NCBI GenBank assembly: GCA_964106915.2
Contig: OZ066914.1
Length of the DNA: 64,000 nucleotides
Source of the DNA: Podarcis gaigeae
Taxonomy: Eukaryota
Strand: one strand, 5' to 3'
The notes beneath the pieces are model-generated. The model saw only the letters and a list, made by a program, of their open reading frames with translations. It did not search any database and was not told the DNA's origin. A program made the position numbers and the translations under genes. Below, in pieces: positions 13,890-53,069 of the stretch. Every line of letters starts with the position of its first letter. The stretch's first letter is position 1.

Positions 13890-14175
13890 ACGAAACTGGG
13901 TCAAGCAATCATGTTGATCAAGGAATAGTTAAGTAACAGACAGCAGAGCGTAGGAACAAGTGGGCTGTTCTCTCAAAGGAGAGATATTGAAAGTGGAGTC
14001 TCCAAGAATCATTATTGGGACTTGTGCTTTTTAACTAGAGTTAGAAGTGAGAGTGAGGCAGCCAAGTTTACCGAAGATAGTAAATAGTTTGTGGCAGTTG
14101 AAACAAAAAGGAATTGTGAAGAGCTCTCAAATAACCTTCAAACTAGATGAATGGGCAAATGCAATTCTATGCAAA
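13890..14175 (+). mobile_element. CR1 LINE RT fragment
   Basis: Degenerate SGV.Q.S.LG.VLFN and W..LDEWA. Confidence 0.5.
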
Positions 14176-14365
14176 CAGTGTAAAGTAGGGGTAGGCAACC
14201 TAAGGCCCAGGGGCCGGATGCGGACCAATCGCCTTCTCAATCCAGATGGTCCAGGAATCAGCGTGTTTTTACATGAGTAGAATGTGTCCTTTTATTTAAA
14301 ATGCATCTCTGGGTTATTTGTGGGGCCTGCCTGGTGTTTTTACATGAGTAGAATGTGTGATTTTA

Positions 14366-14841
14366 CAGTGGTACCTCACAAGACGAATGCCTCGTAAGAC
14401 GAAAAACTCGCAAGACGAAAGAGTTTTTCGTTTTTTGAGTTGCTTCGCAAGATGAATTTTCCTATGGGCTTGCTTCGCAAGACGAAAACATCTTGCAAGT
14501 TTGTTTCCTTTCCGGGCGGCCGCGCGGATGGGTCGGCGCTGGCGGGAGCCTCGTCTGTGGGCGCCGCCACCGCTCTCCCTTCCAAATCCTGCGTGCAGCG
14601 CCCGTACAGGATAGCCAGCACCAGCAGCGCCAAGAGCAGCGCGGCTAAGAGCAGCGCCAGCAGCGCGGCGGACTTTTTGCCCACATAGAAGCCCGAGCGC
14701 AACTTGACGGTCATGGTGGCTAGTTGAAAGCGAGGGGGGAGCCTGAGCGACTGAGGAAGAAATTCAGCACAGGATCCGTGCTTCACAAGATGAAAAATTC
14801 ACAAGATAAAAAAATTAATTTCGTCTTGCGAGGTACCACTG
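14366..14841. mobile_element. Tigger/pogo-like (Tc1-mariner) MITE carrying a captured LVRN fragment
   Basis: TIR CAGTGGTACCTC...GAGGTACCACTG, TA TSD at both sides, subterminal CGCAAGACGAA repeats, GC-rich foreign core. Confidence 0.9.
14512..14778 (-). pseudogene. LVRN: Captured 5' fragment of laeverin/aminopeptidase Q exon 1 (ATG at 14714)
   Basis: GCCACCATG, then MTVKLRSGFYVGKKSAALLALLLAALLLALLVLAILYGRC...RPPG. Resembles the recalled LVRN N-terminus (SGFYVSRAVALLLAGLVAALLLALAVLAALYGHC...RPPG). Confidence 0.8.
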
Positions 14842-15754
14842 TATTTAAAGTGCATCTCTGGGTTATTTGTGGGGCATAGGAATTTGTTCTTTCCCCCCCC
14901 AAAAAAATATAGTCTGGCCCACCACATGGTCTGAGGGACGGTGGACCGGCCCACAGCTGAAAAAGGTTGCTGACCCCTGGTATAAAGTAATACATGACAG
15001 GGCAAAAAATATTCACTTGTGGTGAGAGGGCTGCTCCAAGGTTGCTGTAAAAAGGCTTTGCTCCTGCAGAGGACAGCAGAACAGACCCTCCAAGTGTCCC
15101 TGTTTTCCAGGGACAGCCCCAGATTTACAGATGCCACTCCAGTTTCTGATTCAATCCCAGAATGTCCTGCTTTTCTGCAGGACGTCCCTATTTTCATCTG
15201 AGAAATGTTGGAGGGTATGGAGTTATGTGACCTCTGAGCCAAGAAGATAAGCAACTATACAACATTTGGAAGACACCTGAAGGCTGCCTTGTATAGGGGT
15301 CTTTTTAATGTTTAATGTTTTATTATGTTTTTATATATGTTGGAAGCTGCCCAGAGTGGAACAGGGTGTCCCTATTTTCATCTGAGAAATGTTGGAGGGT
15401 ATGGCAGAATGTCTGAGGAACTGTATTCCTTCGATGTGCCCAATCATTACATTGACTTTAAGACATTAAAGAGGGTGATACAGTTGGCATTGATACCTGG
15501 TTTGATGTCAAAGCTGATGACTCTGAGTGCAGAGATGCCTGTTGGCATCCAGTTATTTATGAAGTTCCTTAATTCATTCAACCTAGTTTAGTTAAGGGGT
15601 GTATTAAAATCTTGTGACATTATGGATCATAATAGTTCTCTATAAATATTCTTTCAATTAAGAGCAGAAATGAGCAAACGTTTGAATAGTTTAAAAATAA
15701 TTTTGTACAACGGTTAATGAATAATCTAATATTTAAATCAGGTAACCTAATTTT

Positions 15755-15894: not shown

Positions 15895-16016
15895 CAATTT
15901 TTATTTTTTAAAAATATGTTTTGACTAATTTTTCATTGTTTTCATTTTGGTTAACCTATCATCACATTTGTCAAATAAAATCTGCTTAGCCTGCTTATTC
16001 TTTGTTGAGAGCATAA

Positions 16017-16380
16017 AGGTAAAGGTACCCCTGCCCGTACGGGCCAGTCTTGCCAGACTCTGGGGTTGTGCGCCCATCTCACTCAAGAGGCCAGGGGCCA
16101 GCGCTGTCCGGAGACACTTCCGGGTCACGTGGCCAGCGTGACATCGCTGCTCTGGCCAGAGCCAGAGCCAGAGCCACACACGGAAACGCCGTTTACCTTC
16201 CCGCTAGTAAGCGGTCCCTATTTATCTACTTGCACCCAGGGGTGCTTTCGAACTGCTAGGTTGGCAGGCGCTGGGACCGAACGACGGGAGCGCACCCCGC
16301 CGCAGGGATTCGAACCGCTGACCTTTCGATCGGCAAGTCCTAGGCGCTGAGGCTTTTACCCACAGCGCCACCTGCGTCCC
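16017..16380 (-). mobile_element. Sauria SINE, full length
   Basis: (ACCTTT)n tail; 13-bp TSD gttgagagcataa. Confidence 0.93.
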
Positions 16381-18899
16381 GTTGAGAGCATAAGAAGGTG
16401 GTTATTAAGCCTGAGCTTCCGATCAAGCTAAGAGCCTAATTTCATCCCAATTTTGGCATCCAATGTATGTGTCTACCCCAGCCCACTTGGCCTTCCCTCA
16501 GGAAAGACTGGGTAAATCAGGAGCTTTGGGTGTCCCTGCCCAAAGGTGTCCAATAGCACATGCTCCCCTCCACACCACCTTTCCCTTCGAGCCCCAACCA
16601 TCTTGCAAAATCAAAAAACACTGTGTGCCTCTCCAGCCCATTGCTGGAGACAGGAGTGGTGGTGAAGTTGCCTCCTAGCGCCTCTGATTTAATGCTCCAT
16701 TTCAAAGATGCAGCATGAGGTCAAGGACAGGACGCTGCCCCTTGGGACAGGAGCATGTTCTGAAGGCCACAAGAGGGGGGCGCAGAAAGGCGGGGAGAGT
16801 AGAAGAGAGAAAGAAAGAAAGTGTAACTATATTTATTTTTGCTCAGGCTCCATCCAACATCAGCTCCAGTCCCTGATTGAATTTATCATTTTCAATTTAC
16901 TAAACTGAGGCTGTGTACACACCTTGTGTTCAAAGCACACAAACTCTCCAGGAATCCCAATGCTGGGAATTTTAGCTCTATAAGAAGTAAACCACAGTTC
17001 TTAGGATTCTGGTGTGTGTGTGTGTGTCTTTGTGCACCTATGCATGCTTTAAAAGCACTTTAAATGTATGATGTGTTTGCAGTCTGAATGCAAAAGATAT
17101 TGGAATGCAAATGAGCGTTCTTGGGGTAATGCATGTTTACAGAAATATAATTTCCTGGTGTTATGCATAAATTTGGACAATCAGCATTACATTTTTGCCA
17201 TGGTTGTGACACAGTCCTGATGCTTTTTAATGTTAACAATGACCTCCCCAAAATCAAAGCACTTCATTACCGGTAATTATTCAAGAGTCGACATGCCTTG
17301 GATATGTTCCATTGAGTAAATGAGCACAGAGCAAAATGGTTTCTTGATCTGCAGCGGATGATCGAATCAATATATTAGGGGCCTCCAGCCTTTTGGTATC
17401 CTGGGGGAATTCACCACTTTGCCCCTCTCTGTGTGTCCTGCTCTTCCTGGGTTCATGGAGACTAAACTACCACAGGTGTGCTGGCAGTACATAGGACACT
17501 CACTACTCACAGAGCCTGGCTGAGCCTGGCAGTGTGGGAAATATACCCTGAAGTACATAGCAATGGTGTGCCTTCACATCATTTACAGGAACCATGTTGT
17601 TCTCATTTTGATTCTGATTTGAAAAGCATTCCTCTTCAGGTGTTCACAATCCAGCAACATTACCATTTGTGTGGGAAGGGATGAGTATGCAAGCTCCACT
17701 CCATGCATTACTAATGCATTAGCCAGCTTCCACTTCCAAAATGGGACTCTGGTGTTGTAACCCTAGAATTCCACAATGCACAGGAGAACCTTGGCCAAGA
17801 GAGAGAGAAAAGGCTTCTCACTTTCCACAACTGCAGTTACTATTAACTCTAAAATTCAATTAATGCATATTGTCAACTCTAATATTAGGTCTAAGGTTCT
17901 TGATGCTATCAACAACAAACACTACTAATATGAACTTTTATTTACATGCATATTAAAGGAGCAAGTAGGAAACAGCTCTTAAACTGTAGATGGGCCAATC
18001 ACTGAATGCATGTAGTAACTTTGTTCCTTGTCATATGCAATTCTCTTAGTGAAGAAAGATCTGTTGACATACGAGGAACAAAGTTCCTTGTTTATTTTGT
18101 CATCTAGTCCAACCCCCTAAACTAAAGCATCCATAATAGACGGCCTTCCAACCTCTGCCTAAAATCCTCCAAGGAAGGAGAGTCCGCAACCTCCCGAGGG
18201 AGATCGTCATGATGAGAAAGAAGATACTACAGTTCAACACCAGGATAGACTGTGACTGAATGTTAACCTTCTATCTCTGATCTCTTATACCATTTCTTCT
18301 CCTGAGGCCCTTGAATAATTCATAGTAAACTACAATAGGCACAAGCAGCGTGTTTCCTTCTTGCAAAATTGTTGCGCTGAAGTTGGCCAGAAAGATGAGT
18401 AGAAAGATTAACAGAGAAGCATTTTTCAAGTTGATAGTTAAACAGTGGAAACATGGTTCCCACTTGCATTGTCCATACACAAACCTATGCACCATTTTCC
18501 ATGACCCCTCCACTTTCACAGGTGAAGTGGGTGGTGAGCAAAGGTAGAGTATTTTTGGTGGGGGCACCCAGCTTTGTAATGCCCTCAACAAGAGTGTTCA
18601 CCCAGTGCAACTCTGAAATCTTTGCAGCACCAGGTGAAGTGTTTTTTCATTTGCCTGAGTCTTTAGATTTGCGGATTTACTGTATTCTGTGTGTTGGTTT
18701 TGTGTTGATTTTATTGCTACATGATGACGTTATGATTTGACTGCATTTTCTCTCAGATCCTTGAGACTGACGAATGTCCTGTTAAATTATATGAATGAAA
18801 TTCACTTCCTCAACCCTTCCTCTGGATATTTTTTAATTACTACAACACCATCAACCCAGGCCAACATGGGCTGTGCTCAGGAATGATGGAAATTATAGT

Positions 18900-27129: not shown

Positions 27130-27293
27130 NNNNNNNNNNNNNNNNNNNNNNNNNNNNNNNNNNNNNNNNNNNNNNNNNNNNNNNNNNNNNNNNNNNNNNN
27201 NNNNNNNNNNNNNNNNNNNNNNNNNNNNNNNNNNNNNNNNNNNNNNNNNNNNNNNNNNNNNNNNNNNNNNNNNNNNNNNNNNNNNNNNNNNNN
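27130..27293. other. Assembly gap
   Basis: 164 N. Confidence 1.
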
Positions 27294-27889: not shown

Positions 27890-29000
27890 GAGAAAAACGG
27901 GACTCCACGTCGCCATTTGGCGGCACAATGTTATATCGCACACACCACGCATATCAATCGCTTTTTCTTTCCCAATCTTGCAGAGTCCATCCAAGTATCT
28001 CTTTATTAAAGCGGGGGTGTAAATGAGCAGTTGTAAAACATGCAAAACATGACGGAGGAAGGAGATGAAATATGCGTGCTCCACGTGGCTGTCGAAAAGG
28101 AAGAGTGGGCATAAGATCATTAAGTCCGAGGTCTGAAAGTATAGCTTAATCAACCACATGCCAACACTCGGGGCGGTAAATGGGCAACAACAAAAAGTGC
28201 CATTATGGCTTTTCCAAAAGGGATCCAAGAGGCAGCGCTCTGTTGTTGGGTGTGGCACTTCAAGGCGCCTTCGGAGACACCGAAGCCGGCGCCCAGTAGC
28301 CAATGGGCTCCCTGGAGAGCGCGGGAAGCCAATCAGATCCCGGAGGGGAGCGTCCCTGCGGGAAGGCGCTGGGCAAAGCACGTTTATGATCTATCTCCTC
28401 GCCTTCGAGCGAGTTTCTCGCTGACAGCGGCGCTGCGCGGACGTCGGAATTTCCACAGGAGATCCGTGACTGCCGCGGGGATCGCAGCGGGCAGAGAGAA
28501 GGCCGGGAGAGAATGGCTCCTCCGCTGCAGGAGACCGCGTCGGGAGTGGGGTCGGGAGCGGGAGTTGAGGAGAAGCGGGCCAACGGGGGCGGCGAGGTCC
28601 GTTCCCGCCGCTTCTTCACCTGGGAGGAGATCCAGCAGCGCTCGGGGCGGATCAAGCCCGAGCGGTGGTTGGTGATCGACAGGAAAGTCTACGACATCAG
28701 CAGCTTCCACCGGCGGCACCCGGGAGGCTCCAGGGTGATCAGCCACTATGCCGGACAAGACGCCACGGTGAGAGCGGTGCGCGGGTTGTGCTCCTCTTCC
28801 TCCTGGGGGGGGGGGGGTTGCAGGTCGCGGCGGGGAAGCCCTGGTGGCCCTGGATTACCAAGTGCGCAAGGCAGGGATGCGGATTACCAATCGCTCTTCC
28901 CTGGGACCGGCAACTTCTGGGATGGTTCTAAAACGGAGTTATCCTGGTGAACGACACGGGATGCGTGTAGAGGTCGTGTGAACGTTTCAGCGCTTGGCAA
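27890..29000 (+). promoter_or_regulatory. CpG island / promoter of the FADS1-like gene
   Basis: High CpG and GC content spanning exon 1. CCAAT boxes at 28300-28304 and 28329-28333, E-box CACGTG near 28082, YY1-like CGCCATTT near 27911. Confidence 0.75.
28513..28767 (+). CDS. FADS1: FADS1-like exon 1 (cytochrome b5 domain, HPGG)
   Basis: MAPP...[11 protein letters not shown]...[34 protein letters not shown]; donor GTGAG at 28768. Confidence 0.95.
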
Positions 29001-52131: not shown

Positions 52132-53069
52132 CAGTGTTTTTCAACCACTGTTCCGCGGCACACTAGTGTGCCGTGAGATGTTGCCTGGTGTGCCGTGGGA
52201 AAAATTGAAAATTTGAATTTTTTTTTTAAAAAAAATGTCAAATTTTCGCCCACTAGGCAGGCGCCGGACCACGCACTTGTTGCCTCCAGGGCTCGTGCTG
52301 CCCGCTGGCCCGGCTCTCGGCGGCGCCCGAGGCACCCAGACCCGCCGCCTCTGGGCCGGCGCCGCTGCCACCCGCCCGGCCGCCATGGTCCCGCTGGGGG
52401 AGAGCACGGCCGAGCACGGCCCAGGCCACCCTGGGCGGGGAGGCCGCCGCCGCCGAGGCCGGGGCTGCTGCCGGCGCGCCCTCTGCTGTCTCTGGGGCTG
52501 CTGCAGCTGATCCTGGGCTGCTGCCTGGTGGTGCTCAGCTTTGGGGCGCTGTCCCTCAGCAGCTCCCCGCAAGTGAAGAACTCCTGCCCCTTCTGGGCCG
52601 GCTCCTCAGTAAGTGCGCCTGGCCCAGCGCCTCTGGGGCCGCCCAGAGCCGGGCAGTCTGTGGCCGGGAAAAGGCCTGCTCTTGACATTCCCCTCAGAGG
52701 CGAGCTTCCTTTGTTGACCCCGATTGTTTCCTTTCGGTTCTCCGCCAGTGAGTGTTCGCCCTCCAATGGCAGGAGCGCCCGGCCCTTAGCGAGAGGCTAA
52801 GGGTTTCTTGTTCACCTCTAGACCAGAAGAGGTAGAAAATGAAAGTTTTTTTGGAAAATTTTGATATTATGTCTCATCATACAGCTCAGGACCAGGGTAG
52901 TCTCTTATACACCCAGGAGATTACTGTGGTCTGTAAAGTAATTATTACTTTATATATAGTCAATATAGGCACAGAGTTAAATTTTTAAACATTTTCTAAT
53001 GGTGGTGTGCCTCGTGATTTTTTTCATGAAACAAGTGTGCCTTTGCCCAAAAAAGGTTGAAAAACACTG
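52132..53069 (+). mobile_element. Non-autonomous hAT (Charlie-like) element carrying a captured ENTREP1 exon
   Basis: Perfect 15-bp TIR CAGTGTTTTTCAACC/GGTTGAAAAACACTG; perfect 8-bp TSD CCTTATGG (52124-52131, 53070-53077). Confidence 0.93.
52246..52820 (+). pseudogene. ENTREP1: Captured ENTREP1/FAM189A2 5' exon (ends 52608) plus start of the following intron
   Basis: PLLSLGLLQLILGCCLVVLSFGALSLSSSPQVKNSCPFWAGSS|GTAAGT is the FAM189/ENTREP family first TM segment, closest to FAM189A2 as recalled. No later exons recognised in the window. Confidence 0.8.

What the first reader, a model, noticed from the sequence alone, without database searches (positions are those of the whole stretch)
14376..14778. 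Tigger-like MITE with captured LVRN start forms an intact chimeric ORF (signal anchor + transposon-derived tail)
Seen: the minus strand has a perfect GCCACC-ATG at 14714 and about 67 codons of LVRN-like sequence (cytoplasmic tail, hydrophobic type-II anchor, stalk to RPPG). The frame continues without a stop into the MITE arm (KETNLQDVFVLRSK...AFVL*) and ends at 14376, giving 112 aa. About 65 nt of putative LVRN 5' UTR/promoter came along. The cargo stays CpG-dense, while several CGCAAGACG arm repeats show CpG-decay variants (CACAAGATG). Inference: it could be an expressed membrane micropeptide or a portable unmethylated island.
Basis: partly seen in the sequence, partly recalled or inferred. 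Interest (0 to 1): 0.78.

Follow-up and report, generated by a model that had tools for sequence, protein, structure and literature searches.

The report
Lizard MITE carrying an LVRN gene start
A small cut-and-paste transposon in a wall-lizard genome has picked up the first 264 bases of the laeverin (aminopeptidase Q) gene; this kind of gene-fragment capture is already known, and nothing here suggests the resulting 112-codon reading frame is used.

Summary
A 476-bp Tigger-like MITE (14366-14841) has 22-nt inverted ends and a TA target duplication, and sits inside another abundant repeat. It carries 264 bp of GC-rich foreign DNA (14512-14775). On the minus strand this cargo holds 61 nt of leader, GCCACC-ATG and 68 codons. 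Those codons match residues 1-73 of Podarcis muralis aminopeptidase Q (LVRN): 62 identical, one 5-residue gap, and the match stops exactly at RPPG. All nine hits in a 1.84-billion-protein search are M1 aminopeptidase N-termini, and the named ones are aminopeptidase Q/laeverin.

The functional reading is not supported.
- The 44-codon tail is no surprise: two of the three frames of that arm are open.
- The cargo holds under half of exon 1, with no splice donor and no catalytic domain.
- Five of the eight listed differences from copies in other lizards are CpG-to-TpG/CpA changes in this copy. That points to germline methylation, not a protected island.
- The arms are as CpG-rich as the cargo, so the whole element is simply young.
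- No transcript of the chimera was seen, but expression could not be properly tested.

This is a Pack-TIR, a kind described in animals. The scan already noted several Pack-hAT captures on other DNA of this genome, but not this cargo. Interest is low to moderate.

The parts
14364..14365 (.). TA target-site duplication, left copy
   Evidence: I1 arms include TA on both sides. joint 14363->14842 skips 478 nt (476 + 2) in other copies of the host repeat.
14366..14387 (+). Left terminal inverted repeat (CAGTGGTACCTCACAAGACGAA); its one mismatch to the right TIR lies at a CpG
14366..14511 (.). Left MITE arm with four to five copies of the CTCGCAAGACGAA-type subterminal motif; it encodes the ORF tail on the minus strand
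   Evidence: D1/D2; very many contigs lie here. In other family members the sequence runs on past 14511 as TTCTTAAAACCG..., not as the cargo.
14512..14775 (-). Captured host DNA: 61 nt of LVRN leader plus the first 68 codons of LVRN exon 1 (the third base of codon 68, 14511, is arm or ambiguous)
   Evidence: native-type contigs from three runs (X2 rec 26, X15 rec 14, X16 rec 19) match only within 14512-14775. Searches give the protein identity. GC 0.66, CpG o/e 0.95.
14715..14775 (-). Captured part of the LVRN 5' leader, ending in GCCACC before the ATG
14376..14714 (-). Chimeric ORF of 112 codons plus stop: residues 1-68 LVRN-derived (basic N-tail, hydrophobic segment about 16-37, stalk), residues 69-112 read from the MITE arm, stop inside the TIR
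14776..14841 (.). Right MITE arm including the right TIR (14820-14841)
14842..14843 (.). TA target-site duplication, right copy
14263..14365 (.). Host repeat (tandemly doubled 64-nt unit) into which the MITE inserted; it continues at 14842-14875
   Evidence: D4, D5; very abundant, and copies without the MITE exist.

Best explanation
This is a Pack-TIR: a non-autonomous Tigger/pogo-type MITE whose interior was replaced by a 264-bp copy of the 5' end of the lizard's own LVRN (aminopeptidase Q) exon 1. The element sits at a TA inside another repeat. The capture most likely arose by template switching during repair or replication of a MITE copy (inferred; this is the mechanism proposed for animal Pack-TIRs in PMC8277862). 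Whether the cargo entered this resident copy in place, or arrived here by transposition of an already loaded element, is unresolved. The 112-codon ORF is a by-product: the native start codon happens to read into an arm that has few stop codons. The copy is young and is decaying neutrally. It is most likely methylated and has no function of its own.
For: Structure: TIRs, TA duplication and a precise 478-nt 'empty' form in other copies of the host repeat. Arms abundant, cargo rare, and family members without the cargo join 14420 or 14488 to about 14813.

Origin: a 68-aa query gave 9 hits at E<=1e-3 among 1.84 billion proteins. Eight carry Peptidase_M1_N and some also Peptidase_M1; the ninth (P0005, a partial 168-aa entry) has no Pfam domain but aligns over the same N-terminus. 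The named hits are aminopeptidase Q/laeverin. Against P. muralis LVRN (A0A670J1I7) 62 residues are identical, and the match ends at RPPG, after which the native protein runs on into the M1 N-domain. Zootoca LVRN gives 50/61.

Neutrality: 5 of the 8 listed cargo differences are CpG to TpG/CpA in this copy, including a CG-to-TA double change at 14721/2. At least 5 amino-acid changes plus a 5-codon deletion stand against 2 silent changes. Two of three arm frames are open, while shuffles of the arm's base composition stay open for 44 codons in only 5% of cases, so the openness comes from the repeated arm motif. No Pfam domain in the ORF. No short relatives of the chimera.

Precedent: 370 Pack-TIRs in 100 animal genomes, 115 of them TcMariner, including a Pack-Tigger1.
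Against: The parent-copy comparison therefore rests on the P. muralis protein and on short contigs from other lizards. Expression was not properly tested: the runs that might be RNA are only guessed to be RNA and come from other organisms. The 15-nt deletion is in frame and the ATG and Kozak context are intact, which is what a selected ORF would also show. Three to eight distinct cargo-like contigs per related genome hint at several copies whose nature (paralogs or Pack copies) is unknown.
Confidence: 0.82

Rival explanations
1. One reading: the chimera is expressed as a type-II membrane micropeptide, or the cargo acts as a portable unmethylated CpG island or promoter.
For: Intact GCCACC-ATG. 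Four net positive charges before a strongly hydrophobic 19-22-residue segment (mean hydropathy 3.3). The cargo meets numerical CpG-island criteria. The deletion relative to native LVRN is in frame. In humans a share of exon-derived Pack-TIRs are transcribed, mostly as chimeras with flanking genes.
Against: An open tail is expected by chance. CpG-specific decay in this copy argues for methylation. The arms are equally CpG-rich, so CpG density reflects youth, not protection. Only 61 nt of upstream sequence were captured, and a native-type contig extends at least 78 nt further. No contig joins cargo to arm in the possible RNA runs. Amino-acid changes outnumber silent ones.
Confidence: 0.05
2. Loaded-element reading (a sub-variant of the best explanation, not exclusive of it): one capture produced a Pack-MITE that then transposed, so this copy is one of several and the family spreads the LVRN signal-anchor start around the genome.
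For: Intact TIRs and TA duplication. In each of two related genomes, 3-8 distinct contigs overlap single cargo positions, with differing small indels around 14560-14575. That is more than two alleles of one gene would give. Other Pack elements of this genome were reported as multicopy by earlier agents (not checked here).
Against: No listed contig bridges an arm/cargo junction. The contigs that reach the cargo ends run on into sequence unlike the arms. LVRN paralogs exist in other squamates and could account for the extra variants. Most animal Pack-TIRs are single-copy and arose in place. No run holds this copy's own cargo words (best share 0.40, about the share of the element made up by the arms).
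Confidence: 0.4
3. Not one element: an LVRN pseudogene fragment that two independent MITE insertions came to flank, or an assembly chimera.
For: The MITE family is abundant enough for chance neighbours.
Against: There is exactly one TIR at each end, in inverted orientation. A TA duplication flanks the whole unit, and the host repeat is restored exactly when 478 nt are removed. There are no inner TIRs. Both arm breakpoints lie inside the family's sequence.
Confidence: 0.03

Closest known systems
Pack-TIRs of animals (Tan et al. 2021, Nat Commun 12:4280; PMC8277862), including TcMariner cases such as the gibbon Pack-Tigger1
   Same: A TIR DNA transposon with intact ends and target duplication whose interior holds a short copy of non-TE host DNA. 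Exonic sources are over-represented, and breakpoints lie inside the TE rather than at its tips.
   Different: The carrier here is a very short, very abundant lizard MITE. The cargo is specifically a gene start (leader, ATG, signal anchor). That paper's text mentions no lizards or other reptiles. Copy number and the parent locus were not established here.
Pack-MULEs and other Pack-TYPE elements of plants
   Same: Gene-fragment capture between transposon ends, often GC-rich 5' parts of genes, sometimes producing chimeric ORFs.
   Different: Different superfamily (TA-duplicating pogo/Tigger type rather than Mutator with 9-10-bp duplications), an animal host, and a single small fragment.
Pack-hAT captures of first exons noted by this scan in the same lizard genome (ATP1B3, PKD2, ENTREP1 and others)
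   Same: Same genome and the same kind of cargo: a CpG-rich 5' exon of an unlinked gene. One lies in this same window at 52132-53069.
   Different: Those ride on hAT elements and often include the splice donor and the start of the intron. This one rides on a Tigger-like MITE and stops inside exon 1. These are unchecked AI notes and were not re-tested here, apart from a weak CD20-like hit at 52195-52800.
Native LVRN / aminopeptidase Q (M1 family, type II membrane protein)
   Same: The first 68 residues: cytoplasmic tail, signal anchor and the start of the stalk.
   Different: Only about 7% of the protein is present. There is no Peptidase_M1_N, catalytic or ERAP1_C domain, and the tail is transposon-derived.

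Membership tests
Pack-TIR (gene-fragment-carrying TIR transposon) | Both ends are TIRs of a recognisable, repeated TE family | tested here: met
   22-nt TIRs with 1 mismatch. The arms match very many contigs in four runs.
Pack-TIR (gene-fragment-carrying TIR transposon) | Target-site duplication flanking the whole unit | tested here: met
   TA/TA. Other copies of the host repeat lack exactly 478 nt.
Pack-TIR (gene-fragment-carrying TIR transposon) | The interior is non-TE host sequence with a parental copy elsewhere | tested here: met
   Protein-level match to lacertid LVRN residues 1-73. Native-type contigs match only 14512-14775 and then run on differently.
Pack-TIR (gene-fragment-carrying TIR transposon) | Mobilised with its cargo (needed only for the 'multicopy' subclass) | tested here: inconclusive
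   Several cargo-like contig variants in relatives, but no junction-bridging contig is listed.
Tigger/pogo-type (TcMariner) MITE | TA target duplication and short TIRs (about 20 bp) | tested here: met
   The family description (TA, 8-33-bp TIRs, present in reptiles) is from PMC9219625.
Tigger/pogo-type (TcMariner) MITE | TIRs shared with an autonomous Tigger element that encodes the transposase | not tested
   No autonomous copy lies in the window. The resemblance of CAGTGGTACCTCG to Tigger ends is recalled from memory only.
M1 aminopeptidase (LVRN) protein | Peptidase_M1_N and catalytic Peptidase_M1 domains | tested here: not met
   No Pfam family at E<=10 in the 112-aa ORF. Homology ends at residue 68.
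CpG island / promoter | Length >=200 bp, G+C >=0.5, CpG o/e >=0.6 | tested here: met
   264 bp, 0.66, 0.95.
CpG island / promoter | Unmethylated in the germline and holding a transcription start | not testable with these tools
   Indirect evidence points the other way: 5 of the 8 listed differences are CpG decay in this copy, and a native-type contig extends at least 78 nt upstream of the captured leader.

The most novel reading that the evidence does not exclude
The loaded MITE is a mobile, multicopy family that scatters a ready-made start codon and type-II signal anchor through the wall-lizard genome. At least one copy would then be transcribed, either as a membrane micropeptide or as a new 5' exon for a neighbouring gene. 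That would be exon shuffling of a membrane-targeting module by a Tigger-type MITE in a vertebrate.
Probability: 0.06. Interest if true: 0.6.

Novelty: new member of a known kind. Interest (0 to 1): 0.3.

Why it matters
It adds a clean, well-delimited case of gene-start capture by a Tc1/mariner-type MITE in a reptile. Together with the many hAT-borne first-exon captures noted in the same genome, it suggests wall lizards are unusually rich in such events and could serve to study how CpG-rich gene starts get copied into transposons. On its own, this copy looks like a neutral passenger and explains nothing about LVRN biology.

Tried and rejected
- Pfam scan of the ORF: nothing.
- Word-based protein search limited to 62-196 aa: nothing. 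This says only that no similar short protein is on record.
- Rfam over the window: nothing.
- Other copies of the TIR or of the cargo in the 64-kb window: none.
- Earlier notes of the scan searched by cargo sequence and by the words LVRN and aminopeptidase: nothing.
So there is no DNA alignment to native exon 1, no proper dN/dS, no microhomology test at the breakpoints, and no check for a MITE beside the native exon.
- Copy number from depth: rejected, because the reads tool states that summed contig depth is not a copy number. Only counts of distinct contigs were used.
- The GC-rich block at 16000-16400 was considered as a nearby promoter. On reading it looks like a tRNA-derived SINE, so it was dropped.
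- For the X15 contig (666 nt, minus strand), which side carries the 465 unmatched letters cannot be told from the table. The 'further upstream' statement therefore rests on the plus-strand X16 contig only.

Full report
**What is in the sequence.** Read on the minus strand, 14841-14366 is a single short element.
- It has 22-nt terminal inverted repeats, CAGTGGTACCTCGCAAGACGAA at 14841-14820 and its near-perfect complement at 14387-14366. They differ by one mismatch, which lies at a CpG. Shuffled sequence gives 0 matches.
- It is flanked by TA on each side.
- Both arms carry degenerate copies of a CTCGCAAGACGAA motif (families D1/D2).
- The element interrupts the second unit of a tandemly doubled 64-nt repeat (D4/D5).

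Contigs of four public runs from related lizards were laid on 13900-15300.
- The arms (14366-14511, 14776-14841) and the host repeat attract very many contigs, whereas 14512-14775 attracts only a few.
- Other family members run on past 14511 with a different interior (loose ends TTCTTAAAACCG...), or join 14420 or 14488 to about 14813 with 14-30 other letters between.
- Some copies of the host repeat lack exactly 478 nt (14363->14842). That equals the 476-nt element plus one TA.

So this is one MITE with a foreign 264-bp interior, inserted by transposition at a TA. No other copy of its ends or of its cargo lies in the window.

**The ORF.** ATG at 14714 sits in GCCACC-ATG and opens 112 codons ending at 14376.
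- Residues 1-15 carry four net positive charges.
- Residues 18-36 form the most hydrophobic window (mean hydropathy 3.3), consistent with a type-II signal anchor.
- Residues 69-112 are read from the MITE arm, and the stop lies in the TIR.

**Where the cargo came from.** Pfam and the length-limited word search were blank, so the 68 cargo-encoded residues were scored against all 1.84 billion representative proteins.
- Nine proteins reached E<=1e-3. Eight carry Peptidase_M1_N just after the matched N-terminus, and some also carry Peptidase_M1 and ERAP1_C. The ninth (P0005, a partial 168-aa entry) has no Pfam domain but aligns over the same N-terminus.
- The hits that carry names are aminopeptidase Q/laeverin of Varanus, Rousettus and Callorhinchus.
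- A word search seeded with the Varanus protein's first 150 residues retrieved lacertid LVRN.
- Against Podarcis muralis A0A670J1I7 the ORF matches residues 1-73 with 62 identities and one 5-residue gap. The match ends exactly at RPPG. The native proteins continue PWD..RLP..HY into the M1 N-domain.
- Zootoca LVRN gives 50/61 identities.
- Native-type contigs agree on the limits. X16 record 19 spans 14512-14775 and carries 15 and 78 further letters that do not fit the arms. X2 record 26 starts its match at 14512. X15 record 14 matches 14575-14775 at 96.5% identity and carries 465 further letters that do not fit the window.

The cargo is therefore 61 nt of leader plus the first 68 codons of an exon that runs to roughly codon 200 in relatives. 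That exon length is inferred from exon-1-sized ORF hits of 204-233 aa that all end near ...GESR. The splice donor was not captured.

**Is the chimera more than a passenger?** Five lines of evidence say no, and two leave a small opening.
1. On this strand the arm is open in two of three frames. One frame has no stop at all, and the frame used stops only in the TIR. Base composition alone would leave 44 codons open only 5% of the time, so the openness is a property of the repeated arm motif. An exon fragment captured in this orientation would therefore read through about two times in three.
2. Eight cargo positions are listed where this copy differs from the contigs of other lizards. At five of them the others have CpG and this copy has TpG or CpA: 14569, 14594, 14685, and the adjacent pair 14721/14722, where CG became TA. 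Preferential CpG transition marks germline-methylated DNA (established knowledge). This argues against a protected, unmethylated island.
3. The arms are not more decayed than the cargo. CpG o/e is about 1.4 in the arms, 0.95 in the cargo and 0.17-0.26 in the flanks. The whole element is simply young. A few arm sites (for example 14453) show the same C-to-T change relative to the family majority.
4. Relative to P. muralis LVRN there are at least five amino-acid replacements and a 5-codon deletion, against two silent changes identified. That is roughly neutral, though power is low and species differences are mixed in. At two of the replaced positions (17 and 24) this copy agrees with Zootoca.
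5. Only 61 nt upstream of the ATG were captured, while the plus-strand native-type contig runs at least 78 nt further. The native start site and promoter were probably left behind. This is an inference, because the run is only guessed to be RNA.
7. Expression was not really testable. No run holds this copy's own cargo words; the best share, 0.40, is about the share of the element made up by the arms. The possible RNA runs come from other organisms.

**How it arose.** Animal Pack-TIRs are documented: 370 in 100 genomes, of which 208 are hAT and 115 TcMariner, including a Pack-Tigger1. That paper concludes that single-copy cases arise mostly by transposition-independent gap filling into a resident TE, and that multicopy ones arise by transposition after fork switching.

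Both routes fit here. In two related genomes, 3-8 distinct contigs overlap single cargo positions, with differing small indels near 14560-14575. That is more than two alleles, so more than one locus carries LVRN-start-like sequence there. These could be Pack copies or LVRN paralogs; Elgaria and Varanus have several aminopeptidase Q-like genes. No listed contig bridges an arm/cargo junction. I leave this open at about 40% for a mobilised family.

**Comparison and novelty.** Structurally this meets the definition of a Pack-TIR on a Tigger/pogo-type MITE. TA duplication and about 20-bp TIRs fit the family description in PMC9219625. The link to an autonomous Tigger was not tested. The ORF is not an M1 aminopeptidase, because it lacks every domain of the family.

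The scan's earlier notes report several hAT-borne first-exon captures elsewhere in this wall-lizard genome, and one in this window. None reports this cargo. Those notes are unchecked and were used only as context and for the organism.

**Limits.**
- The single reads call and the single run search are spent.
- Summed contig depth was not used as a copy number, as the tool instructs.
- The N stretch at 27130-27293 was left alone.
- Human proteins appeared in the hit list and were not used further.

Noticed in passing
window 28200-28950: A CpG island with a plus-strand ATG ORF (28513-28950) that holds a cytochrome b5 haem-binding domain (Pfam PF00173, E 4.7e-16; PDB cytochrome b5, E 7e-9). It is probably the first exon of a cyt-b5-domain gene about 14 kb from the Pack-MITE.
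   Followed up: partly
Its plus-strand ORF 52195-52800 gives a weak CD20-like family hit (25.5 bits, just under the 27.9 cut-off). So one window holds two gene-start captures on transposons of two superfamilies.
   Followed up: partly
window 16010-16385: A GC-rich block (0.60-0.63) that reads like a tRNA-derived SINE on the minus strand (GGTTCGAATCC box), not a promoter.
   Followed up: no
window 14187-14365 and 14842-14985: The repeat hosting the MITE is itself among the most abundant sequences in the related lizard runs. Its 64-nt unit is tandemly doubled here, and neighbouring blocks at 15075-15300 are also highly repeated.
   Followed up: partly
window 14366-14511, minus strand: The MITE arm has no stop in one frame and only a terminal stop in another, so any coding fragment captured in this orientation tends to yield a 'chimeric ORF'. 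This is a caution for other such findings in this genome.
   Followed up: yes
proteins P0028, P0029, P0050 (Elgaria) and P0004, P0010, P0011 (Varanus): Several aminopeptidase Q-like proteins map to one contig in each of these squamates, suggesting tandem LVRN duplication in some lizard lineages.
   Followed up: no
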